A stretch of 33,000 nt of DNA, taken from positions 1,327,999 to 1,360,998 of the forward strand of contig RDEW01000010.1 of the NCBI GenBank assembly GCA_011109175.1, given 5' to 3'. Position numbers and translations under genes: made by a program. This document shows, piece by piece, positions 3,780-31,840 of the stretch. Each line of letters opens with the position of its first letter. Within the stretch, counting starts at the first letter, position 1. The DNA comes from Dicyema japonicum. Its lineage: Eukaryota > Animalia > Dicyemida. The notes below the pieces were generated by a model, which did not search any database, had not been told where the DNA came from, and saw only the letters and a list, made by a program, of their open reading frames with translations.

Positions 3780-4682
3780 ATGGATTATCCACACAATTAT
3801 GATCTCGACAATGGTAACAAGCCGGAAAACCAATTCTCCAGCCAATATGGAAATCCAAAGTTATTTTACAACAATTTCTTTTACCCATCTGAACCCCCAA
3901 TAAATAATGATGATGTATTCGGACTCATCCGCAACCAAGATTACTACCCTAGACTGTATGAGATCCCACATGGGGGAGGGGAGGACTATTGGAATTCGTA
4001 CCAAGTAAATGAAATAAATAATTTTAACTTTTTGTGTCACACAAAACCACAAATGGAAGATCAAAAGTTCAACATTGTAACACTGTGCAGTGATAAAAAT
4101 ACTTGCAATGAGGAATATGTTAAAATCACCTCAGAAGAACTTATTGAGTTTGCAAACAAATTCAAACAAATCAGAATTAGAAATGGATACACTCAGGCTG
4201 ACGTGGGGAACTCATTGGGGAATCTCTATGGAACCTTCCTCTCCCAGACGACCGTGTGTCGTTTCGAATCCCTGCAACTCTCCTCAAAGAATATGTGTAA
4301 ACTGAAACCCCTAATGGAAAAGTGGATAAAGGAAATCACGTTCAATAATGTTGATTTTAATGGATCAGAAAAACAGTTTATATTGGGAAGTAAACGGAAA
4401 AAGAGGACTCCGATCGACAGTTCCGTGAAATATATGCTTGAAAAGTACTTCTCTCAAAATCAAAAGCCTGGATCGTTGATTATCCGCCAGATTGCTAATA
4501 CCTTAAAACTCGACAAGGATGTAATTCGAGTCTGGTTTTGTAATCGTCGACAGAAAGAGAAGAGAAACTTAGGATACAACCATTCCTTACCGGGCGAAGG
4601 GAATTTTTCCTTGGACAATCCCTTCAGTGAAACCAGGGAGGATCCCTTATATTACGGAATGAATGGTAGTCGACATGTTTAA
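3780..4682 (+). CDS. POU3: POU domain class III transcription factor (Brn1/2/4, vvl-like), intronless, 300 aa
   Basis: POU-specific domain EELIEFANKFKQIRIRNGYTQADVGNSLGNLYG...SQTTVCRFESLQLSSKNMCKLKPLMEKW. POU homeodomain KRKKRTPID...VIRVWFCNRRQKEKR. The LQLSxKNMCKLKP and KRKKRT signatures, and the lack of introns, match class III. Confidence 0.93.
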   Translation: MDYPHNYDLDNGNKPENQFSSQYGNPKLFYNNFFYPSEPPINNDDVFGLIRNQDYYPRLYEIPHGGGEDYWNSYQVNEINNFNFLCHTKPQMEDQKFNIVTLCSDKNTCNEEYVKITSEELIEFANKFKQIRIRNGYTQADVGNSLGNLYGTFLSQTTVCRFESLQLSSKNMCKLKPLMEKWIKEITFNNVDFNGSEKQFILGSKRKKRTPIDSSVKYMLEKYFSQNQKPGSLIIRQIANTLKLDKDVIRVWFCNRRQKEKRNLGYNHSLPGEGNFSLDNPFSETREDPLYYGMNGSRHV

Positions 4683-5940: not shown

Positions 5941-6358
5941 CTGATTCGCTTCTTTTGTAAAATAATGATGATTTTTATATAAAAATCATAATTAGAATAT
6001 CTGTTTAACAATTGATATTTCTCTCAAGGATGAGACTATAACTTTGAGTCTTGGTGTATCCAACAATATCAATATACAAATTAGTCGTATTTGTTTAGTC
6101 CACTTTAGACTTTAACGAGAGTTATATTTTTTGATTTAAAACGTCAAAAATCAAGTATTTATATTGATTTCCATTTTTGTCTAAATTAAACTAATTTCAT
6201 TAAGTTGGCCTGACAATAATGATCGGTAGTGTTGTAGCTCACAGAATTATATTTCATTATACAAACTAAATGCATATAAAAATAAATTAATATATCCAAA
6301 AAATAAAGTTATTAACGTTTTATTGTATTGAGTAAAGTTATTAACTTTTATTTTTTAT

Positions 6359-6430
6359 AATTTTCGATGTGTTCACCTTTACGTGGAGAAAATTGGATAC
6401 CAGTATCAATCTGGCAACTAAAAGAACCAC
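6359..6430 (+). ncRNA. candidate HDV-like self-cleaving ribozyme at the LINE 5' end
   Basis: P1 AATTTTC(6359-65)/GAAAATT(6388-94). J1/2 GAT. P2 GTGTTC(6369-74)/GAACCAC(6424-30), with one bulge. P3 ACC/GGA, with one mismatch. L3 TTTACGT. GG follows P1'. P4 CCAG/CTGG. C6418 is followed by TAAAA. The element order is that of the HDV double pseudoknot. Confidence 0.72.
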
Positions 6431-6551
6431 AATTATTCCCCTGTCAACCTTTTCAACGACCTCTGGGAAGTCGGACTGGATGATGGTTGCTATTGAGCGG
6501 GCGCGTAGCTTTCGCTCCCAAAGATCGGATTGGCTACTCCTAATCCTTGCT

Positions 6552-6578
6552 GGGGACATCAAACAGAACCCCGGAACC
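6552..6578 (+). other. 2A/StopGo-like peptide GDIKQNPGT (degenerate) preceding the APE domain
   Basis: LLLILAGDIKQNPGT versus the consensus D(V/I)ExNPGP, in frame and about 8 codons before the APE motif IMQFNING. Confidence 0.7.
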
Positions 6579-9500
6579 CAAAAGAACGGGAAAATCCTCA
6601 ATATCATGCAATTCAACATAAACGGCCTCACACACAAATCAAATGAACTTTTTGCATTTCTAACTTCCCACAAAATAGATATTGCCATGCTACAGGAAAC
6701 GAAACTATCAAGAAAGTCAACGCTTCCACACTACAAAGACTACTCAATCGTCCGCCATGGTCGACCAAATTCAAACAGAGGAGGCGGTGTTCTCATACAC
6801 AAATCTATTCCATTTTCCGATACTTTCGCTCAGACACAAGCTCTGTTTGAAGATGACGATCACATCGAACTTACTTCCGTCTTGGTGAAAATAAACCACA
6901 CAAGGTATACATTTGTAAATATCTACATCCCGCCACCAAGTCCCAGTATGAAACATTACTCCCAAAACTAACCGAATTGCAAAAGATTGAAAATGTGATA
7001 ATCTGCGGACACCTAAATGCAAAAGATCCTATCTGGCTAATCGGCCAAAAGATTAATGGAAGGGGGCTTCAGGTCCTCTCTCAACTAGAACAATTAGTTA
7101 TCCTCAATGACAGGAAATCACACACTCGAACAGCTTTTAGACCTGAAGACTCTAATACATCACCTGACTTCACACTATGTTCTCCATCACTATCTTCGAC
7201 GATATCTTGGAGAATTGTATATGACCTACACTTGGACCATAATCCAATTCAACTGTCAATCGAACTACTCTCGCCTATTGTTAGGCATCGGAAAACTATA
7301 ACGAATTACAAGCGTGCAAAATGGGATTCATTCAGAAAAGAAACAGAAAAATTTCTATCCGACTTTTCCGTTGAGAATTTCAAATCGCTTGACGCCGCAA
7401 TGAAATTTTTTAATGAGGTCATCCTCAGTGCCGACAAGAAGTACATTCCAAGAGTACTCATTGCAGAATATAATCCCAATTTCACTATGGAAATTATCGA
7501 AAAGATTTACAAGACGGCGACTCAAAAAATCAAGAATTTATACGGCCGAACTATCCAACCTTAATAGCGATATTACAGAATTAATCAACAAGAGGAAATT
7601 GGACCGTTGGAACAATTTCATCACAAAAATTAACCACCGAACAAAACTAAAAGATTTTTGGGGCACTTTACGTGGAATTCAGTCGAAACAAAATAGAATG
7701 GAGACAACCCAGGCCACCAGTATTGACAAGAATCAAACACCACGTGATTTCACTCATCAGGCAAATGTCATGATGGACCACTACTCAAAAGTGAGTCACA
7801 TAGATATGAACAAATACTCTCGTCCATGCAAATTGAAAAACGTTCAAACTCCTCAAAGAAAAACCAATTGAAATTAGTACGTTGGATGTCGTAAAACTAA
7901 TCAAAAACGCCAAAAACTCTCCTTCCAAAGGGCTTGATGGAATCTGCATTTAAAGCACCTGGGAATGCAAGGACTTAAATCAATAACAGACATAATTTCT
8001 GTGTCCATCTGCAGAATTCCTGCACTATGGAAAAATCCAAAATAATCCCAATCCTGAAACCCAAGAAAGATCCTTCGGATCCGGGATCTTTCAGACCAAT
8101 TTCACTACTATCTGTAGGATCGAAAATTGTCGAATGTGTTGTACTGAAACTAATATCGAAGTATCTTTTCTTCCCTGATTTTCAACATGGCTTTCGTCCA
8201 CAATACTCAACATTAACACATCTCTCTACCTTAACTCAATATCGCTGATGGTTTTAACAATTATAATCCTTCAAAACGGACTATCCTTGCATCGATCGAC
8301 CTAACCAAGGCGTTCGATCGAACATCAAGGCGCGTGATAAACAACAAAATTCTTGTATCTGGAATTTCTCCACGTCTTCAGAATTGGTTAACAAATTTCC
8401 TCTCTGGAAGAATTGGTCGAGCTGAAATTATGTCATGTCTATCTTATTACAGACTCCTTCCAAATGGAGTTCCCCAAGGCTCCGTTTTATCACCCACCTT
8501 ATTCAACTTACACCTAAGCGACATTCCAATCAATTCCAAGACACTTCTCCTATTGTATGTGGATGACATGATTGTTGCCTCTAAAGACATAGTCGTCAAC
8601 GAAGCAACGAAGGATGTTCAGATCCACTTGAACACTCTTAAAGAGTGGCATGGAGCTAACCACCTATCCCTCTCTCCATCGAAATCCACCGTCACTGTAT
8701 TCACGTCCAACCGTCGCCAACTAAATTTTCAACCTATTTTAACAATCCATGGACAACCACTCACCTTTACGAAACATCCCAAAATACTTGGAGTTATTTA
8801 TGACCAACTACTAACCTTTTCTAAACATGTGGAGGAACAATGTACAAAGGCCTTTCAAAAGATTAACATACTTAAAGCTGTGTCAGTCCATTCCTTTGGT
8901 CAAAGCAAAAAAGCCCTAACCATCATAAACAATTTATTCGAACAACTATTAACTATGCAAGCCCTTGCTGGTCGACCTCTGCCTCTCTTACTTCTATTGA
9001 CAAACTACAAAAAGTACAAAACATCGCGCTCAGGATAATTACTGGATGTCTCAGATAAACTCCTGTCGATCATCTACATTGGGAGTCAAAGATCCTTCCA
9101 ATTGGAGACCATCTGGAAATGAGAGCCCAGCAGTTCCTCTCTCAAGCCTACAATCTAGAACATCCCTGCCAATCCCTATGCAAGCAGCAAAACAAAAGGA
9201 AAATTATTATGACAACCAGTGATTTGTCTCGAATGTTATCATCCATTCCTTCCATCCCCAATGACAGGAGTCGTCTGAAACAGATACACGATTTTGTTTC
9301 TACGAGAAGCATCCGAAGACTCGGAGACAATAAAATACTACAGCGACCCCCTCCTCCAATAGACCAATCAGAATATTCTTTTTCAAGGGACGTGCGAGTA
9401 AACCTGCCTCGTCTACGATGTGGGCACCACCCATATCTACCAACATATGATGTACTCTGCCCCTTTTGCAACTTCCATGTGCTGACAACAAATCATCTAT

Positions 9501-9919
9501 TTCAATGTCATGAATTGGCACAACACTTCTCCACAATGCCGGAACTGACCGATCTATGGGAGCGACCAACATCTGCTGCGTCCTACTTAATAGCTGCTGG
9601 CCTCCTACAAGTTAGTGAGACTGGGGTTACTTAACTAACTAACTTTTATTGTATTGTTGGTTGAGGTTGTGACGTCCCTCTTCTGTACTATGTCTAATGC
9701 ACACACTAGAAAACTCGTGCTAATAACATTCAATGTGAGAGGGATTGCAACCTCACTAATAATAGATAAAACTTGAGTAAGTAGTAACTTTAAAATATAA
9801 CTCAATGTGTTTCATGTTGCTAGTAACATTAGAATAGTTCATTTTAGTAAAGGCATAATGATTTTGGTCTAAGAAATTGTGTATTTACTAGCAAATAATA
9901 ATAGTGGATAAATCATCCC

Positions 9920-12122: not shown

Positions 12123-12329
12123 AAATAAACATAAAATTGAAGATCTAAATATAAACGAAATATCAACAAACGACAAATAATAAAGATTTATTAAACTTCC
12201 AAAGTGTTACTACTAAGCAGCCCTTGTCAGTCCATCCTTGTAGGATAGGAGCAGTGTAACTCTTTTCTTTAAAATATATCCAGTTTGGTGAGTTATATTC
12301 AACCAACCACAAAGCACTTTTTTCCTTTT

Positions 12330-12398
12330 TTTAACCCCACCAGACTCGTCCTCTCCTTTGTCGGTCTGGGATCACTTAGTTAGTTGAGAACTTTTTAT
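12330..12398 (+). mobile_element. isolated LINE 3'-end fragment
   Basis: ctgggatcacttagttagttgagaactt is nearly identical to the reverse complement of 30991-31020, the 3' end of the LINE at 30960-31840. Confidence 0.6.
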
Positions 12399-13918: not shown

Positions 13919-14557
13919 GATCCCTGCTTGGTGATAAAGAAGACATCATTGCACGGAAGATTAAAGCAAATACGGCCTTATACAACTTGAGAAGAAATTG
14001 GTTTCTAAGAAAGAAGGGCTTGAATCGAGAGATCAGAACTCGACTATACAATTCGTTAGTCAAACCAATACTCCTATATAATGCAAGTTCTTGGTCATTA
14101 ACCCTAAATGACATTGAAAAACTAAACTCCTTCCATCGGGGACAACTACGGAAGATTCATTCGTGCTGGGACCGTATGAGAACAAAAAGTCAAGAACTAT
14201 ACTCTATTACGTCTTCTAAACCGATTTCACTAGACATCATGGAATTTCGTTGGAGTTTATTTGGACACATCCTACGGGGAAATATCGAAACTCCAACTAA
14301 TATTGCCATGGAGGAATACTTTCAAACCGAGGAGGTGAATTTCCGAGGACGTCCGAGAGCATCACTGGCCACGACACTGAATGAAGACCTGAAAAGAATA
14401 GGATTATCTCTAACTACGGGAGATGACCTGGATTACTCGAGGGATTTGGCTCAGGATCGTGGAAGTGGAGAAAATTAACTAAAAAATTAATGTTTGGTAC
14501 TGCACTGGTTTTGTCATTTCCAATGGCAAGACGTTGTGCTTTATAATAATAATAATA
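13919..14557 (+). mobile_element. 5'-truncated RTE-like LINE
   Basis: 9-bp TSD attcaagta (13910-13918 and 14558-14566) and a (TAA)n tail. RLYNSLVKPILLYNASSW, RWSLFGHILR and RGRPR motifs typical of the RTE C-terminus. Confidence 0.85.
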
Positions 14558-18569: not shown

Positions 18570-21090
18570 AAAGTTAATTATAAAAAAGACACCAGATGAA
18601 CCCATCTTCTCTCAGAGGCGTCCTCATCCTCTCTAGATCCAACAAAGTCTCGATAGGTACGTTGCTCCAGTGATTTCCCACGTAAGATGCACGCGACGTG
18701 ACCTCTTTACAAGGTCCTCGAAAGAGATTTCCAGTATTATAACGCTTGTTATTCAATAAATAGACTGGTTAACGATGTTCCCATCATGTAGATATATGGG
18801 AGAATGTTGGGCCAATAATAGTCTTTGATGCCTTTTGAATAGTTGATGGTCGATGTTCTTGAAACAAACAAAGACCAAGCCTCACTTGCATGGGGCAACG
18901 TCGGCTGGACAAACTATTTGTAGATCATCTGAAAGCATCTAGCGTCACTTCTGAGAGCCTTGAAACGACTTTTAATAATCGTCATCCTTTCAGTGCAGCC
19001 GTTACTCGGTTATCCAAATGCTTTGGGAAATAGAGTCCTTGGTCGAGTGTCACTCCAAGTATATTTGGTGTGTAATTGATGGGAATTACTCTGTTATTGA
19101 GAGAAATGTTAGGTTTCAATAAATAGTCCCTCTTGCACGTTGTAAATAGAATAATGTAGGATTTTGTAGGGGAAGCTTCAAGAGGGAGTTTCTTAAGCTA
19201 AGAAATTAAATTGTTAAGCATGTTCTGGGCAATCGTGGTAGCAGACTTTTTTTCCTTTGCAGCGATAATGATATCGTCCGAGTATGATAGTAGAAGACAA
19301 TTTTCGTAGTGCGGTTTCGGAATGTCATTGATGTACAGGTTGAAAAGGGCTGGCGATAGTGGGGATCCTCGAGGGATTCTATTTGGTAGGAGACGGGATT
19401 TTGACTTTATGTTATTGCAAATCACTTTTCCACGTCTCCCACTTAAGAAATTGGCAATCCATAGTTTTATGTTTGGGTGGATGCATGTATCGTAAATTTT
19501 CTCAGTAAGGAGTTTTCTTGAGACTGTGTCGAAAGCCTTTGTTAAATCAGCAGAGACCAAGACTGTTCGTTGGTCTGGTTTAGTGTAATTGAATCCCTCC
19601 GCAATGAACTGGCACAGGGACGTTAGGTATGTTGCTGTGGAGTGTTTAGCCCGGAATCCACGTTGGAAAAGAGAGAGCAGGATGTAGTCTTTGATATTTA
19701 AAAAAACTAATCTTTGGAGTATTCGGGAAAATGAACATAGGATCTAGATTGGTCTATAGGAAGAGGAGTTATTTTCGGATTTTCCTGGCTTCAAGATCGG
19801 TTTGATGTATGATCTCTTCCAGACATCCGGAATAATGTTCCTATTTATTGATATTGTGAATATGTAAGCAATTAAATCTAAAACAAGTGGTTCTAGATGC
19901 ATTAGTTCCGTTGTATAAATATTTTCTGGACCTCGGGCTTTGGAGTTTCGGGCCTTTGATATTGCTCACTGGACGTCCTTCGCCGTAAATATGGTCCACA
20001 CATATGATCTTTTCGGTTTTATTCTGTTTAAGAGTACTTAGTGTTCTTTGGAGTAGTTTTTGTGTGCTATGGAAGCATAGTATTTCATTAAGGTGTTTGG
20101 TTTTAGTGATATCCCATTTCATCTAAAGACCTTTTGATAGACTTGATTTTGTTCCAGACCTTCTGTACCGACGGATTTTCTGTTAGGACTTTGATAGTTC
20201 TGTCCAGCGTTTCTCGTTTGTTTTACTAATATATTTGTTGATCTCCTTGTTTAGTGTACGAATTCTTATTATATCCTCATTCGACGGTATGTTCTTTTTC
20301 TTTAAATAGTTTTTCTTTGACTAAATGTTTGGTTGTTGAATTGAATTGCCTGTTTGTCGGTTGACTTCCCATTGGAATTTATATTTTTCTAGCTTCTTGA
20401 ATTAACGTGAGCTTTATAATGCTGTTTAGTGATGAGGCATCATGTAGTTTTGATGACTTGATCTGCATGTCAATAACTCGCAAATCTTGTCCAGTCAGCA
20501 AGGTTATAGTTTATCAAAGTATGGAGTGACCTTCGATAAGTTGATCTTGTTTTTATTTGTAAAATGATCGGATTATGATCACTCAGAGTTTCGTATTTCA
20601 CGCTCCATGAAATTGAAGAAGCCAGATTGGGAGACGCGATTGAAACGTCAGGGGATGACAGTTTATCATTTTGTCTTGAAGGGGTTCTTTTGTGAAAGTT
20701 AGGGTCGTTTAGGATGCAAAAGGTTCCCAAGTCTTCGATTAGCATATCTCCCCGCCTGTTTGACGTCTGACCTCTCAGCAATAGCGGATATTTTGTATTT
20801 AGATCATCGCAAATAAGAACGTTCTTGAGCTGATCGACGAAAGTTTTAGGCAATTGGCTGATGATGAAGGAGTAGATATGAATTGATCAGAGGGAGTTGG
20901 ATTTTTGTGTACAGAATTTCGATACTTTCATGGTTTTGGAGATGGTTGTAGACGTATTTGGTGATATCTTCATAAAGGATCCCGTTTCGTATGATAATTA
21001 GTAAGCCTCTCCCAAGTTTTCCACGTCTATCTCTGCGGATAACTGAGTATCCAGGAAATTTTGAAGTTGTGTTCGCACTTCTGAGTTTAA
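18570..21090 (-). mobile_element. 5'-truncated, decayed APE-RT LINE of the same type as 6331-9643
   Basis: ICDDLN, SSPDVS, SDHNPI, QRGFR, ADLTKAFDTV, IPRGSPLSPALFN, YSDD and NILGV motifs. It begins inside the APE domain. Confidence 0.88.
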
Positions 21091-21158: not shown

Positions 21159-21495
21159 CAAAAAGGAAAAAACATCGAAAAAGCCGCGTGGCGCATGTGG
21201 TGCTGCGTGGTTAATTGGTTGAAGTTTTCCGCTTGCTTGTCTGTTCCTCCTCTCTCTTCCTATTAGAGTGGCGTCATGTGATCCACCTGTCTAGGTGACG
21301 CCCAGTGTCAGGCCGGCACGAAAAAGGATCATTTGCTCTTCCCCACTCCAGTGGAGGGGTTTCCACAACTGCATGTAATGGACGTCTTACCTTTTATGCT
21401 GATTCCGGATGGACTCTGTAGAAGTGGAAACTGGATACACTTAATTAGTTGTTTACTTTAACTTCTTTCTCGGTGTATCCGGGGTTAATAAATAA
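21159..21495 (+). mobile_element. 337-bp non-autonomous retroelement (SINE-like) carrying an HDV-like fold
   Basis: 12-bp TSD atgaaggaactt (21147-21158 and 21496-21507), a (TAAA)n tail, no ORF and several hairpins. Confidence 0.85.
21270..21331 (+). ncRNA. candidate HDV-like ribozyme inside the SINE
   Basis: P1 GGCGTC/GACGCC. J1/2 ATG. P2 TGATCC/GGATCA. P3 ACC/GGT. L3 TGTCTA. P4 GTGTC/GGCAC. C21319 is followed by GAAAAA. All stems pair, but P1.1 is non-canonical. Confidence 0.6.
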
Positions 21496-24490: not shown

Positions 24491-27428
24491 ATATTTTTGT
24501 TAACTTGAATATTCCAAGTGAATTATTAAAGCATAGTAATTAAATATATTTATCATTTGGATTTATAGAGTAATTGGGTATGCCACAATATCCCCCTACA
24601 AAATCCACTGGTGAAGATTACCATTATCCAAACTCTTCCGTCATTAATGGTGATCTCCGGAAAGGTAGGGCGTGTGATGAAAATGCAAGAGGGCGACCAA
24701 CTTGACCTCTCTTCGGAAGCCTGTAATGGAATATGAAAGATAAATCGGTCGACACAAAAATAAATTCTCTGAGTTTTTTCCTTGGACCATTTTTTTGAAA
24801 AAATAACAAAAAAATAAAAAATATTAATAATTTATGACAGTTTGTGGGGTACAAAAGATAAATGAATAGAATAACTGCCAGAATATGGAATTGCAGCTAT
24901 TATTCAGAAATATATTCAAAATTCTTTATTTTCAAATTGTATTCCAATGATCAGGAGACGAGCACGACAACGAAAAGATGGAGAAGACTAACGGAAAGGA
25001 TAGTCGAAAACATGGTATAAGGGAAACCATAAACAGTGTTTACTGGTAACGCGGATGTGCTTTAACTAACTATTCCAATGATTATTCAATTGATAAAATT
25101 TTGTAATAAAAAACAATTAAATACAGTAAACCACATTAATGAATCGAACTTTAACGATGATTCCATAAAACAGGCTTCAATAAACCTGAAACTGAAATCC
25201 GCAGTCCGAATGACATTTATTATTATTGAAACCAAAAATCACCGACAAATTAAATAAATACATATCCGTCAGGTGATTCCGGTCGCCTCGACTAGCCATC
25301 TCATTCTTGCTCGGTGTTCCTCCAAGGATCCAACGCATTTCCCGATCGGGTGGGGGTTTCTATCTTTTTTGGGGGTAGTAAGGCTCCGATTTTCCTCACT
25401 AATTCCTCAAATGGTGTAGGGTTTAGAGGTTATTGGGAAAACCTTTGCAGAGCCTTACTGGCCGTTTTTTGGAATGTATGGATTTTTTTCATATTCGCGT
25501 TTGATAGTGTGGTTCCCCATGCAGCACACCAGTAAGTTAGAGACGGTTGAATATACTGCACGTAAAGCGAGTCCAAATTTGAGTTGAAACACCCCTTATA
25601 TTGTCCAAGGAGTGTTTTAATAGAATTTAGCTTCATTGTGTGGTGACAGTGAGATCCCTGAAGGACCTTGATCATCGACCTAGTTTTTCACTCTTCCTCT
25701 TCTTCCATTTAGAAAATTAGCATCCAGATTTTCAGGTTGTTTGGGATTTTTGACGTGAAGATCTTCCTTATCAAAAGCTTTCTTGAGACAGTGTCGAAAG
25801 CTTTTTCTATATCGATGGGGCATATCAATGACTTCTGATGAGGTTTGCGTTTTAGGCCATCCTTGATGAAATTTGTAAGGCATGTAAGATACGTTTCTGT
25901 AGAGTGCCCTTTTCTGAATCCGTGTTGAAAAGGTGCATCCAAATGGTTTGATTAGTTCAAGAATCAGCTTTTCCAAAATTTTTGATGTAACACATAGGAG
26001 AGATATTGGTCTGTATGAGGCTGGTGATCCCTTTGGTCGCCTGGGTTTCAGCTTCCATATAGTAGGAATACAATTTTCGTTGATTGAAAAATTTGGTGAG
26101 GTCTATGATAGCAAGGGGCCTATATTTTTCAGAACTATTGCAGGGATTCCGCCCGGACCGCAGGAATAAGTCGACTTTTGACCCTTAACCAATTTCTGCA
26201 CGTTCTCCACAGAGAGGATAATCGGGGAGGTGGCTTTTTTAGGTTTGAGGGCTAGGATGGGTGGACCTTCTAATTTCTTGTGTGGGATGAAACTCGTGGA
26301 GGAGTAGTACTTCATAAGTTTGTTTAGGAAGATCTTGTTTCCATTTCTTCACGTGCGGCCGGGTTGTCAGCGTTAATAAAGCTTCTAAGTGTTTTCCACA
26401 TTTTTGTAAGGGAGTTCTGCTTGTTTAGATTGGACATGAGGTTTTTCCAAACTTTCTCTTGTTTTTTTTGCATTGTTCCTGATCTCTCTTTCTAATTTAC
26501 GAATTCTCAATCTTGTTTCCCAGGATTGTTTTTGGAGGCTTTTTAGGTAATTTCTTTTTTTATGAGTGGATCGGCTCTGGGAGAAGGCATCTTTCTTGAA
26601 CTCAGTGGCCTTCTTTTAATACAAATTTTCATTCCCTCGCGTACCACTCTATTAAAATAGTGTAGTGCTTTATCGATGTTGAAATTAGATAAATGAAAGT
26701 CAAATACATAATAGTCGACAAAATTTGATAAATTTTCCAGTCGACATTTTTGTAGTCGGTAAAAATAACAGGTTTCTTTACAATTGACACTCTTCCTTCA
26801 AACGTAATCATAACGGGATTATGGTCACTGCTGGTCTCGTATAGCACTGTCCATTTTGTTAATGTTGAGATGTTTGGTGAGGCAAGAGTGAGATCGGGGG
26901 ACGATGTCTTGTCATTCGCTCTGTAAGGGGGAGTCCTTGTATTGAATAGAGTTGTAAAATATTACCAGGTCATCCAGATTTGATAACAATTTTTCCTCTG
27001 ACATCGCATGATTGGTTCTTGAACCATGTCGAATGCTTTGCGTTTAGATCTCCACAAAGTAACATATTTTTTGATTTGTCTTCGAAAGAAACTGAATTCC
27101 TTGGGGCATGAGTTAGGGTGGAACATACACATTCAAAATGTTTATGTTTCCGATACTTGTCTGACTGAAATACCAATATATTCGACGGGAGACATGAGAT
27201 TGACAAAAGTTTCGTTTGCGTACGGAATTTCTTTTTTGATAAGGTAAGCAGTCCACCCCCGCCCAGCTGGGCGGTCACGCCTGAAGACGGGAGTGGAAGA
27301 AGACGTAGTTTGTCTTGTTTCTTGGAGTAGGCAAATGTCAGTATTATACTTTTTAAGAGGTTTCTAAATTCGATGATTTTCCCTTTCACTCCATTTATGT
27401 TTAGTTGAATAAAAATAAGGGGTTTTAG

Positions 27429-27455
27429 AGGTCCAGGATTAGGGTTTACATCGCC
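27429..27455 (-). other. 2A/StopGo-like peptide GDVNPNPGP preceding the APE domain
   Basis: ggc gat gta aac cct aat cct gga cct is in frame with LKPLIFIQLNING. Confidence 0.75.
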
Positions 27456-27547
27456 GGCAAAGCATTAGGTGGGCTTCCATCAAGACAGGAGAGAGGTCAG
27501 TGGGCGACCGTCCGAGAAGGACATTCCTCTTGGATTGAACGTAGTGC

Positions 27548-27616
27548 ATGGTTCTTTTGTCTGGGATATATAGTCCACAGTTTACGTCACCAAAAACAGC
27601 GTACCACATGACGAAT
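27548..27616 (-). ncRNA. degenerate HDV-like ribozyme at the LINE 5' end
   Basis: P1 core CGTC/GACG. P2 GTGGTAC/GAACCAT, with one mismatch. P3 GCT/GGT. P4 CTG(T)GGA/TCCCAG. C is followed by AAAA. An ATG overlaps the P2 3' strand. Confidence 0.55.
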
Positions 27617-27699
27617 AATTAAAATTAAAAATTTCAAATTAATTTATTTTGTGTTTATTCTACATTTAAACGGATTTACATTTTAAATTTAAAATTTTT

Positions 27700-27920
27700 C
27701 AAAAATCGTCGCGTGGCGTTATGTGGTGCTACTTTTTGATTATTATTATTATTCTTATATATGAATACAAATAAATTACAATGAATTTAGTATATTTATT
27801 CCCTTCACAATCTAAAAGGCATCGAAATTTGTTTTGTTTGGAATAATGAGGGTTTACTGGGATTACCTAAATGTCTGACTTTTTCTTTCTTTCTCGGTCA
27901 TCCCGTGGTTCTAAATAAAT
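27700..27920 (+). mobile_element. rearranged remnants related to the 21159-21495 SINE
   Basis: Shares the 5' block cgcgtggcg.atgtggtgct and the 3' block ttctttctcggt..atcc.g.ggtt..aataaat. Confidence 0.5.
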
Positions 27921-30959: not shown

Positions 30960-31840
30960 CCATGATCAATGTGTCATAAGACATAAATCAAAGTTCTCAA
31001 CTAACTAAGTGATTCCAGGCAAACAAGGGCGAGTACGAGTCCAGCGGGGTCGAAAATTATGTACAACTCTTTATATCGGACATGGCTCATTGATAAAAAA
31101 AATCTGGTCATTTTCATGTTATTTTGTTTTTCTTCGATCATCATAAAAAATCTATAAATTTTCATTTTCTAATTATATCCTGATTAGTTTGGCTGTCTTT
31201 TTAATCATGTTGTTTTCTAGTGACATAAATTCAGGCCTTAATTCTGATTTATTTCGTCTACTAGACAGGTTGCATTATCTTTGGTAGAATGCCTACTTGC
31301 AATAATAATATGTTGATTATTGTTCCACATTGTGGTCCCAGCATACGTATTGTTTTTATTTTTGTTCCACATTGTGGTCCCAGCATACGTATTGTTTTCC
31401 TTTGCAGTAAGTTTAGTTTTTGGATAGTGGCCTCTGATAACGCGAGTCTCGACGCAGCATAGGCATATTTCACGGCCAGCGCGATTGTCTGGCGCTATAT
31501 GATTTTGATTGCTTTATTCATATTCACTGGGGTCTTCTGGATGAGGTGATGACCTGTTTGGCATGGTAGGTAAAATTAAGCAGCCTGTTGTATGTCACTC
31601 CCAGGATTGAAAGGTTTCTTGTGACAGGTATCCGATTATGTCCGATGAAGATTTCTGGTTCTTCTTTGAAGCCGATACCGAGAGACGGTTAGTTATCAAT
31701 CAATCGTGGATACAATCCACTTTCTTCCGTGCGAGTTAGACTGCTTCTGATGTCGAACTGCTTCTTGTTGCAATGATGATGTCGTCAGCATAAGAACGCA
31801 GTAGGAAGTTCTTGTCAATGTCTGCAGGCAGGTCCGGAGG
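30960..31840 (-). mobile_element. 5'-truncated LINE (RT C-terminal half plus 3' UTR)
   Basis: SYADDIIIAT, ILGVTY and YSARQSRWP/KYAYAA blocks. The 3' end matches 12330-12398. It contains an in-frame 42-bp tandem duplication at ~31320-31400. Confidence 0.75.

What the first reader, a model, noticed from the sequence alone, without database searches (positions are those of the whole stretch)
6359..6430. HDV-like ribozyme at the 5' end of LINE 1 with a lengthened J4/2
A perfect 7-bp AU-rich P1, then P2, P3, L3 TTTACGT, GG and P4 occur in HDV order. L3 recalls the ACC-TCAACGT-GGT core of the L1Tc ribozyme, from memory. The putative catalytic C6418 is followed by TAAAA rather than the usual ~3 nt. 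The other two copies also have long linkers (CGAAAAA, CAAAA), suggesting a family-specific variant that strict descriptors would miss. The reading frame is open from inside the fold.
Basis: partly seen in the sequence, partly recalled or inferred. Interest (0 to 1): 0.8.

Follow-up and report, generated by a model that had tools for sequence, protein, structure and literature searches.

The report
HDV-like ribozyme at a LINE start
The first 73 bases of a decayed jumping gene (a LINE retrotransposon) fold like the self-cutting HDV-type ribozyme that related elements carry at the same place; this is a known way for such elements to trim their own RNA, so it is a solid but fairly ordinary find.

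Summary

Three independent results support it.
- DNA contigs of the same organism show that full-length copies of this highly repeated family begin within 1 nt of 6359, the predicted cleavage site.
- Covariance models built only from the 5' regions of related LINEs, with no window sequence, give 6359-6396 as the top hit in the whole window (18.3 and 18.9 bits, E about 0.02; next real competitor 9 bits).
- Across 13 loci P1 and P3 covary strongly. The P2 pseudoknot and a C-AAA-N J4/2 recur. Relatives reach 23-31 bits against Rfam HDV families.

Weak points:
- This copy has an A:A mismatch in P3, only U:G options for P1.1, a 9-nt J4/2 and a bulged P2.
- It scores 13.9 bits in Rfam (gathering score 44).
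- It sits in a frameshifted element, and no RNA data exist.
- The claim about two other copies in the window is not confirmed.

Verdict: a real homologue of HDV-like LINE ribozymes and a new member of a known kind. Activity of this copy is untested.

The parts
6346..6352 (+). Upstream copy of the target-site duplication (TTTTATT). 6353-6358 are six extra junction bases.
   Evidence: The same 7-mer directly follows the element's 3' end at 9644-9650. Inference.
6359..6365 (+). P1 5' strand (AAUUUUC). The predicted cleavage site is 5' of A6359, the first base of the element.
   Evidence: Pairs perfectly with 6388-6394. The family 5' boundary lies within 1 nt. Model positions 1-7 of R2/R3 and RF02682 align here.
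6366..6374 (+). J1/2 (GA) and P2 5' strand (UGUGUUC, 6368-6374).
   Evidence: Complementary to 6424-6431 with C6428 bulged. Spacing is the same as in L001 and L006.
6375..6387 (+). P3 5' (ACC), L3 (UUUACGU), P3 3' (GGA).
   Evidence: L3 fits the UNYACGY consensus of 12 relatives. P3 covaries in relatives, but here the outer pair is A:A.
6388..6394 (+). P1 3' strand (GAAAAUU).
6395..6399 (+). GG (candidate P1.1 partners of the L3 uridines) and J1/4 (AUA).
   Evidence: Read from the sequence. GG in this position also occurs in L066, L009 and L085. Only U:G wobbles are possible here.
6400..6414 (+). P4 hairpin (CCAG / 7-nt loop / CUGG).
   Evidence: present in the MFE fold.
6415..6423 (+). J4/2 (CAACUAAAA) with two candidate catalytic cytosines, C6415 and C6418.
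   Evidence: Relatives have C-AAA-N between P4 and P2. Rfam aligns C6415 to the model's C.
6424..6431 (+). P2 3' strand (GAAC-C-ACA).
   Evidence: Aligns with the P2 3' strand of L001 behind the same AAAAG junction.
6480..6578 (+). First in-frame ATG (6480) and a degenerate 2A-like peptide (6534-6578, ending NPGT instead of NPGP).
   Evidence: Translation of the frame of ORF 6369-6971.
6597..9643 (+). Body of LINE 1. The APE domain lies in the ORF pieces 6369-6971 and 6977-7564, and the RT domain in the piece 8334-9038. Frames are broken. The 3' tail is (TAAC)3, ending near 9643.
   Evidence: Pfam hits. 3' boundary and copy-number profile. Other copies carry +C after 6960 and +A after 8030.

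Best explanation
Bases 6359-6431 are this LINE family's copy of an HDV-like self-cleaving ribozyme.

Proposed mechanism (inferred):
- The element is transcribed as part of a longer host or read-through transcript.
- The nested double pseudoknot (P1/P1.1/P4 stacked, P2/P3 stacked) forms co-transcriptionally.
- A cytosine in J4/2 (C6415 or C6418) catalyses scission just 5' of A6359.
- The element RNA therefore starts at its own first base. That end is copied by target-primed reverse transcription, so every full-length genomic copy begins there.
- Translation then runs from within or just after the fold (frame open from 6345, first ATG at 6480).
- A 2A-like peptide (6534-6578) would release the APE-RT protein from the leader.

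Shown here: the fold elements, their homology to the 5' elements of related LINEs, covariation of P1 and P3, recurrence of P2 and J4/2 in relatives, and the coincidence with the family's 5' boundary.

Inferred: cleavage itself, the identity of the catalytic C, and the translation step.

This copy lies in a frameshifted element and deviates in the core (A:A in P3, U:G-only P1.1, 9-nt J4/2, bulged P2). It may be weak or dead even if the family's source copies are active. I give about 40% that this exact sequence cleaves measurably in vitro.
For: - Family boundary. Contigs of the same organism pile up about 100-fold from about 6371 onward. Their unaligned 5' parts share AAATTTTCGATGTG and then diverge, so full-length copies start at 6358/6359. 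The 3' boundary is 9641-9644.
- Model R2, built only from L006:124-161 and L001:1534-1571, gives 6359-6396 as top hit in the window: 18.3 bits, E 0.016, gapless. The next hit is 9.4 bits.
- Model R3, built from 10 relatives, gives the same top hit: 18.9 bits, E 0.025.
- On the 13-sequence alignment, 93.8% of cells pair against 62.8% in shuffles. 9 of 10 pairs show compensatory changes. The covariation score is 0.883 against 0.24 (0 of 500 shuffles reach it), and slid controls give about 0.1.
- A P2 pseudoknot of 6 bp or more adjacent to P3 occurs in 7 of 13 loci, against 8% in cross-locus controls. J4/2 is C-AAA-N in most.
- Rfam HDV families hit the relatives: L066 30.9 and 29.5 bits, L009 23.7 and 23 bits, L085 14.4 bits. 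The window gives 13.9 bits end to end at 6359-6424.
- In 17 of 18 loci the element is followed 186-532 nt later by a 2A-like peptide.
- Of 11 R3 hits in non-seed loci, 9 are on the coding strand, upstream of the APE domain.
- HDV-like ribozymes at LINE 5' ends are established for R2, R4 and L1Tc (PMC3774820, PMC3185411).
Against: - Rfam score is 13.9 bits against a gathering score of 44, with no hit at gathering thresholds. Junk hits of similar E-value occur in control regions.
- P3 has an A:A mismatch, and L3 lacks the cytosines that usually form P1.1.
- P1 starts with A-U instead of the usual G:U and is almost all A-U.
- P2 alone (4 contiguous bp) is not distinguishable from chance once bulges are allowed.
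- The MFE fold prefers a competing hairpin (6367-6371 with 6380-6384), and its stability is not unusual (z = -1.15).
- A single-sequence model from L009 did not find the site.
- The seed L001 was picked partly because it looked like the window by eye.
- The family boundary consensus has one extra A upstream of 6359.
- No RNA run exists.
Confidence: 0.75

Rival explanations
1. The 5' structure is conserved in this LINE clade but is not a ribozyme. It could be a binding site for the element's protein, a translation-initiation structure or an internal promoter. In that case the element's 5' end would be set by transcription initiation, not by cleavage.
For: - Covariation proves structure, not catalysis.
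- Many relatives lack a GG after P1 for a canonical P1.1.
- L026 has a complete fold yet no Rfam hit.
- In L1Tc the same 77 nt act as both promoter and ribozyme (PMC3383444).
Against: - The topology is specifically the HDV double pseudoknot, with a C-led A-rich J4/2 in the right place.
- Members of the same alignment reach 23-31 bits against HDV families and no other family.
- P1 starts at the very first base of the element, as cleavage predicts.
Confidence: 0.13
2. Chance resemblance: an AT-rich stretch that happens to satisfy a permissive HDV descriptor.
For: - Loose descriptors hit about once per 500 nt of this window.
- They show no strand enrichment in relatives.
- The Rfam E-value is 3.3.
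- The fold's z-score is insignificant.
Against: - Models trained without the window rank this site first, with about 9 bits of margin.
- The start coincides with the family boundary.
- Combining E of about 0.02 with a positional window of a few nt in 66 kb gives about 1e-6.
- The 3' half also aligns to L001 (p about 0.016).
Confidence: 0.04
3. It is a different self-cleaving class (for example a twister variant, as in Perere-3 of Schistosoma mansoni), or a hammerhead.
For: Twister variants sit at LINE 5' ends in another invertebrate (PMC8501958).
Against: - No twister, hammerhead or other ribozyme family is found in the window, either at gathering thresholds across it or in the relaxed scan of 6250-6550.
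- The conserved twister motifs listed in PMC8501958 are absent from 6300-6480.
Confidence: 0.01

Closest known systems
HDV-like ribozymes of non-LTR retrotransposons (R2/R4 ribozymes; Rfam drz-agam-1 RF01787, HDV-F-prausnitzii RF02682, HDV_ribozyme RF00094)
   Same: - Order P1-J1/2-P2-P3-L3-P3'-P1'-(GG)-P4-J4/2-P2'.
- 7-bp P1 starting at the first base of the element.
- 7-nt L3 with the conserved U...CG.
- C at the start of an A-rich J4/2.
- Variable P4.
- Tolerance of P1/P2/P3 mismatches, as described for R2 (PMC3774820).
   Different: - A-U instead of G:U at the base of P1.
- A:A in P3.
- No cytosines in L3 for P1.1.
- J4/2 of 9 nt (relatives 5-7, usually about 4).
- Score far below every Rfam gathering threshold.
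- Host element is not rDNA-specific.
L1TcRz of the Trypanosoma cruzi L1Tc element
   Same: - The ribozyme occupies the first ~77 nt of the element RNA.
- P1.1 is reduced to one pair.
- A 2A-type peptide lies downstream, in the N-terminal region of the single ORF (PMC3185411, PMC3708506).
   Different: - The host is a metazoan (probably a mollusc), and the LINE is only distantly related.
- Promoter activity of the 5' end is unknown here.
Twister-variant ribozymes at the 5' end of Perere-3 (Schistosoma mansoni)
   Same: - A self-cleaving RNA defines the LINE 5' end next to the target-site duplication.
- The 3' end is a short tandem repeat (PMC8501958).
   Different: The fold and catalytic core are entirely different. 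None of the twister motifs is present here.

Membership tests
HDV-like self-cleaving ribozyme | Nested double-pseudoknot topology: P1 and P2 interleaved, with the P3 hairpin between P2 5' and P1 3', and the P4 hairpin between P1 3' and P2 3'. | tested here: met
   All elements are present in this order at 6359-6431. The same topology occurs in relatives.
HDV-like self-cleaving ribozyme | P1 of about 7 bp whose first nucleotide is the cleavage site and 5' end of the product. | tested here: met
   Seven Watson-Crick pairs. All 7 P1 positions covary across 13 loci. The family 5' boundary lies within 1 nt of 6359. Cleavage itself was not observed.
HDV-like self-cleaving ribozyme | 3-bp P3 closing a ~7-nt L3 with the conserved U and C-G positions. 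| tested here: inconclusive
   L3 (UUUACGU) fits the UNYACGY consensus of relatives. P3 is only 2 of 3 pairs in this copy (A:A). P3 covaries in relatives. A P3 mismatch is tolerated in one active R2 ribozyme (PMC3774820).
HDV-like self-cleaving ribozyme | P1.1: one or two pairs between L3 and the nucleotides just 3' of P1. | tested here: inconclusive
   GG 6395-6396 is in place, but L3 offers only uridines (U:G wobbles). Many relatives lack the GG.
HDV-like self-cleaving ribozyme | P2 of at least 5 bp forming the outer pseudoknot. | tested here: inconclusive
   The window has 4 bp, a 1-nt bulge, then 3 bp, which is not significant on its own. In relatives, 6 bp or more occurs in 7 of 13 against 8% in controls.
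HDV-like self-cleaving ribozyme | Catalytic cytosine at the start of J4/2. | tested here: inconclusive
   There are two candidates, C6415 and C6418. The positional homologue in relatives and in the Rfam alignment is C6415. Function is not testable here.
HDV-like self-cleaving ribozyme | G:U wobble at the base of P1. | tested here: not met
   The pair is A6359-U6394. It is also variable among relatives (UA, CG, UG, GC), so it does not define this clade.
HDV-like self-cleaving ribozyme | Score at or above the gathering threshold of an Rfam HDV family. | tested here: not met
   13.9 bits against 44. The relatives are also below threshold: L066 30.9, L009 23.7, L085 14.4, L026 no hit.
HDV-like self-cleaving ribozyme | Divalent-metal-dependent self-scission giving a 5'-OH product. 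| not testable with these tools
   No RNA runs hold this stretch. A bench assay is needed.
APE-type non-LTR retrotransposon with N-terminal 2A-like peptide (reported for the Rex1, Crack, L2, L2A, CR1 and Ingi clades) | APE and RT domains in one ORF, a 2A motif GD(V/I)ExNPGP upstream of APE, and a short tandem repeat at the 3' end. | tested here: met
   - Pfam Exo_endo_phos and RVT_1 hits.
- GDIKQNPGT at 6552-6578, degenerate.
- (TAAC)3 tail.
- The clade was not assigned by phylogeny.

The most novel reading that the evidence does not exclude
The window's element and its metagenomic relatives could form a distinct, so far undescribed subgroup of HDV-like ribozymes. Its features would be an extended A-rich J4/2 (C-AAA-N or longer) and a weak or unconventional P1.1. 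It would be hard-wired to a downstream 2A peptide as a promoter-less expression module for single-ORF metazoan LINEs. In that module the ribozyme both trims the co-transcript and forms the start of the translated leader.
Probability: 0.3. Interest if true: 0.6.

Novelty: new member of a known kind. Interest (0 to 1): 0.45.

Why it matters
It adds a probably molluscan, highly repeated LINE family to the elements that define their 5' end by HDV-type self-cleavage.

The comparison set shows the same ribozyme-then-2A layout in many uncultured marine relatives. That would explain how single-ORF LINEs without their own promoter can be processed and translated from host transcripts.

Practically, it shows that Rfam HDV models miss most of these elements (scores of 0-31 bits). 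Genome annotations therefore under-count them. The small covariance model built here from the 5' half (P1, P3 and L3) finds them.

Tried and rejected
- Rfam at gathering thresholds over the window gave nothing.
- Self-BLAST showed no DNA similarity among the three LINEs of the window, so there was no within-window comparison.
- The word-indexed protein searches with the APE and RT pieces found no close paralogues (none for the APE piece, 42% at best for the RT piece), and the exhaustive APE search reached only 48%. The family consensus of the ribozyme could therefore not be obtained.
- The search of earlier findings was not open.
- Hand-written HDV descriptors were too permissive. They gave as many or more hits on the non-coding strand.
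- MAFFT could not align full-length ribozymes of different loci, so only the 5' half (P1-P3-L3) could be modelled. P2, P4 and J4/2 were checked by script.
- A single-sequence model from L009 found neither the window site nor most relatives.
- A bulge-tolerant P2 test lost all discrimination.
- The R3 hit at 13999-14069 was rejected because it lies inside an RT-coding fragment.
- A twister-type ribozyme was considered and rejected.
- The LINE 3 5' region was folded by hand. P1 needs a bulge, and no P3/L3 core is present.

Full report
**What is in the window.** The window comes from an animal genome. An intact POU plus homeodomain ORF lies at 3780-4682. Its best homologue, at 66% identity, is an Octopus POU class 3 protein, so a mollusc is likely; this is an inference. 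Two further LINE fragments lie on the minus strand at about 18961-21090 and 26725-27620. They are related only at the protein level (35-42%) and share no DNA similarity with LINE 1.

**The observation.**
- P1 is 6359-6365 with 6388-6394, seven Watson-Crick pairs, six of them A-U.
- P2 is 6368-6374 with 6424-6431: 4 pairs, the bulged C6428, then 3 pairs.
- P3 is ACC with GGA. Only two pairs form, and the outer position is A:A.
- L3 is UUUACGU.
- GG is at 6395-6396.
- P4 is CCAG with CUGG around a 7-nt loop.
- The linker 6415-6423 (CAACUAAAA) is 9 nt long and holds C6415 and C6418.

The frame is open from 6345. The first in-frame ATG is at 6480. A degenerate 2A-like peptide (ending NPGT) lies at 6534-6578.

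**Rfam.** At gathering thresholds Rfam finds nothing in the window. In relaxed mode the only hit in 6250-6550 is RF02682 (the HDV ribozyme of F. prausnitzii). It aligns end to end at 6359-6424, at 13.9 bits and E 3.3. That score alone is at noise level, because control scans of the other LINE 5' regions give unrelated junk at similar E-values. The predicted MFE fold is not unusually stable (z = -1.15) and prefers a competing hairpin.

**Is 6359 the 5' end of the element?** Contigs of DNA runs from one sample of the same organism were laid on 6000-9900.
- Depth rises about 100-fold inside the element and climbs further towards the 3' end, the usual pattern of 5'-truncated LINE copies.
- The 3' boundary is sharp at 9641-9644, after (TAAC)3.
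- At the 5' side, the unaligned parts of contigs entering at 6371 share AAATTTTCGATGTG in all three runs that list such contigs (X1, X3, X4), and are unrelated further upstream. Full-length copies therefore begin at 6358/6359, within one base of the predicted cleavage site.
- In this copy a 7-nt target-site duplication (6346-6352 and 9644-9650) flanks the element, with six extra junction bases.
- Other copies carry an extra C after 6960 and an extra A after 8030, so this copy is frameshifted.

**Relatives.** An exhaustive protein search with the N-terminal piece gave relatives at 41-48% identity at best. Many of them carry an N-terminal 2A peptide. I fetched 87 loci.
- L085, locus of the second-best hit in the exhaustive APE search (44% identity), has a textbook HDV-like fold at 136-216: P1 of 7 bp, P2 of 7 bp, P3 ACC/GGU, L3 UUCACGC, UGG after P1, P4, and J4/2 CAAAC. 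It scores only 14.4 bits against drz-agam-1.
- L009 scores 23.7 and 23 bits against two HDV families.
- L066 scores 30.9 bits (RF02682) and 29.5 bits (RF00094).
- L026, with a complete fold, gets no Rfam hit.

Rfam scores in the teens are therefore normal for true members of this group.

**Independent test.** A covariance model of the 5' half (P1, J1/2 with P2 5', P3, L3, P3', P1') was built from two relatives only, L006 and L001.
- Searched against the whole window with filters off, its top hit is 6359-6396 on the plus strand. The hit is full length and gapless, at 18.3 bits and E 0.016. The next hit scores 9.4 bits.
- The same model found further elements on the coding strand upstream of APE in L016, L026, L007, L020, L085 and others.
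- A second model, from ten relatives without the window, again ranks 6359-6396 first, at 18.9 bits and E 0.025. The runner-up, at 13.6 bits, lies inside an RT-coding fragment and is chance.
- On non-seed loci, 9 of 11 hits are on the coding strand upstream of APE.

Caveats: the E-values are rough. L001 was chosen partly because it looked like the window by eye.

**Covariation.** These counts come from the 13-sequence model-based alignment that includes the window.
- 93.8% of cells pair, against 62.8% in shuffles.
- 9 of 10 pairs show changes on both sides.
- The covariation score is 0.883 against 0.24, and 0 of 500 shuffles reach it.
- Sliding the partner by 1-3 columns drops the score to about 0.1.

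The alignment is fitted to the structure, which inflates these counts somewhat. Even so, the P1 sequences are wholly different between loci yet complementary within each.

**P2 and J4/2.** By script, the P2 pseudoknot adjacent to P3 is 6 bp or longer in 7 of 13 loci, against 8% in cross-locus controls. It is preceded by C-AAA-N in most loci: CAAAU, CAAAC, CCAAG, CUAAA, and CCGAAAA in L001. The window's own P2 is not significant alone. Its 3' half does align to that of L001 behind the same AAAAG junction (p about 0.016).

**Layout downstream.** In 17 of 18 loci a 2A-like peptide follows the element by 186-532 nt. In 9 of them the frame is open from the element's first base.

**Interpretation.** The 5' end of LINE 1 is homologous to a structured element that related LINEs carry at the same position. 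That element has the HDV double-pseudoknot topology, with a C-led J4/2. Some members score significantly against bona fide HDV ribozyme families.

Together with the boundary result, the best explanation is an HDV-like ribozyme that sets the 5' end of the element RNA, as established for R2, R4 and L1Tc (PMC3774820, PMC3185411). The linker really is longer than usual, and most so in the window and in L001.

The catalytic C remains ambiguous. C6415 is the positional homologue in relatives and in the Rfam alignment. C6418 fits the C-UAAA pattern of L066.

**Limits.** Cleavage is not shown, and no RNA run exists. This copy deviates from the clade consensus at P3 (A:A) and at the L3 positions that would form P1.1. 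It sits in a dead element with a spoiled 2A motif, so it may be inactive.

The family consensus for the ribozyme could not be obtained. The reads tool lists only the best-supported differences, and no paralogous proteins are in the searchable collections.

LINE 2 is 5'-truncated. CGAAAAA near it lies on the opposite strand. LINE 3 gives no hit with any model.

**Novelty.** HDV-like ribozymes at LINE 5' ends are known. 2A peptides in CR1, L2, Rex1, Crack and Ingi LINEs are also known (PMC3708506, which does not mention ribozymes). The combination of the two is documented for L1Tc. This is a new member of a known kind. Its modestly interesting clade-level feature is the A-rich extended linker and the ribozyme-2A module.

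Noticed in passing
window 3780-4682 (+): Intact ORF with POU and homeodomain. The best homologue, at 66% identity, is an Octopus sinensis POU class 3-like protein, which suggests a mollusc or cephalopod genome.
   Followed up: partly
window 6305-6358 and 9644-9660: The LINE 1 target lies in a ~29-nt tandem duplication. The TSD TTTTATT flanks the element, and six extra bases (TTTTAT) sit at the 5' junction.
   Followed up: partly
window 6534-6578; L-loci: A 2A-like peptide (LLxxGD[VI]ExNPGP) follows the ribozyme-like element by 186-532 nt in 17 of 18 related loci. In the window copy the final P is T.
   Followed up: partly
window 21170-21205 (-) and 27695-27725 (-): A shared ~30-nt motif (GCACCACAT..CGCCACGCG..TTTTT) lies upstream of both minus-strand LINE fragments. 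Origin unknown; it may be the end of another repeat.
   Followed up: no
window 18961-21090 (-) and 26725-27620 (-): Two further LINE fragments. LINE 2 lacks the APE N-terminus. LINE 3 keeps a 2A-like AGDVNPNPGP (about 27425-27455) but has no recognisable HDV-type 5' core.
   Followed up: partly
window 13987-14478 (+): ORF encoding a C-terminal RT fragment of yet another LINE. A weak model hit at 13999-14069 lies inside it and is chance.
   Followed up: yes
L066 1711-1777: Canonical HDV-like ribozyme (RF02682 30.9 bits, RF00094 29.5 bits) lying downstream of an APE fragment, with no 2A peptide after it. It may be the start of a second, nested element.
   Followed up: partly
window 12328-12394 and 30990-31056: 67-nt inverted repeat, 82% complementary, with arms 18.6 kb apart.
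   Followed up: no
window 6960 and 8030: Many other copies of the family carry an extra C after 6960 and an extra A after 8030, so this copy has at least two frameshifting deletions.
   Followed up: partly
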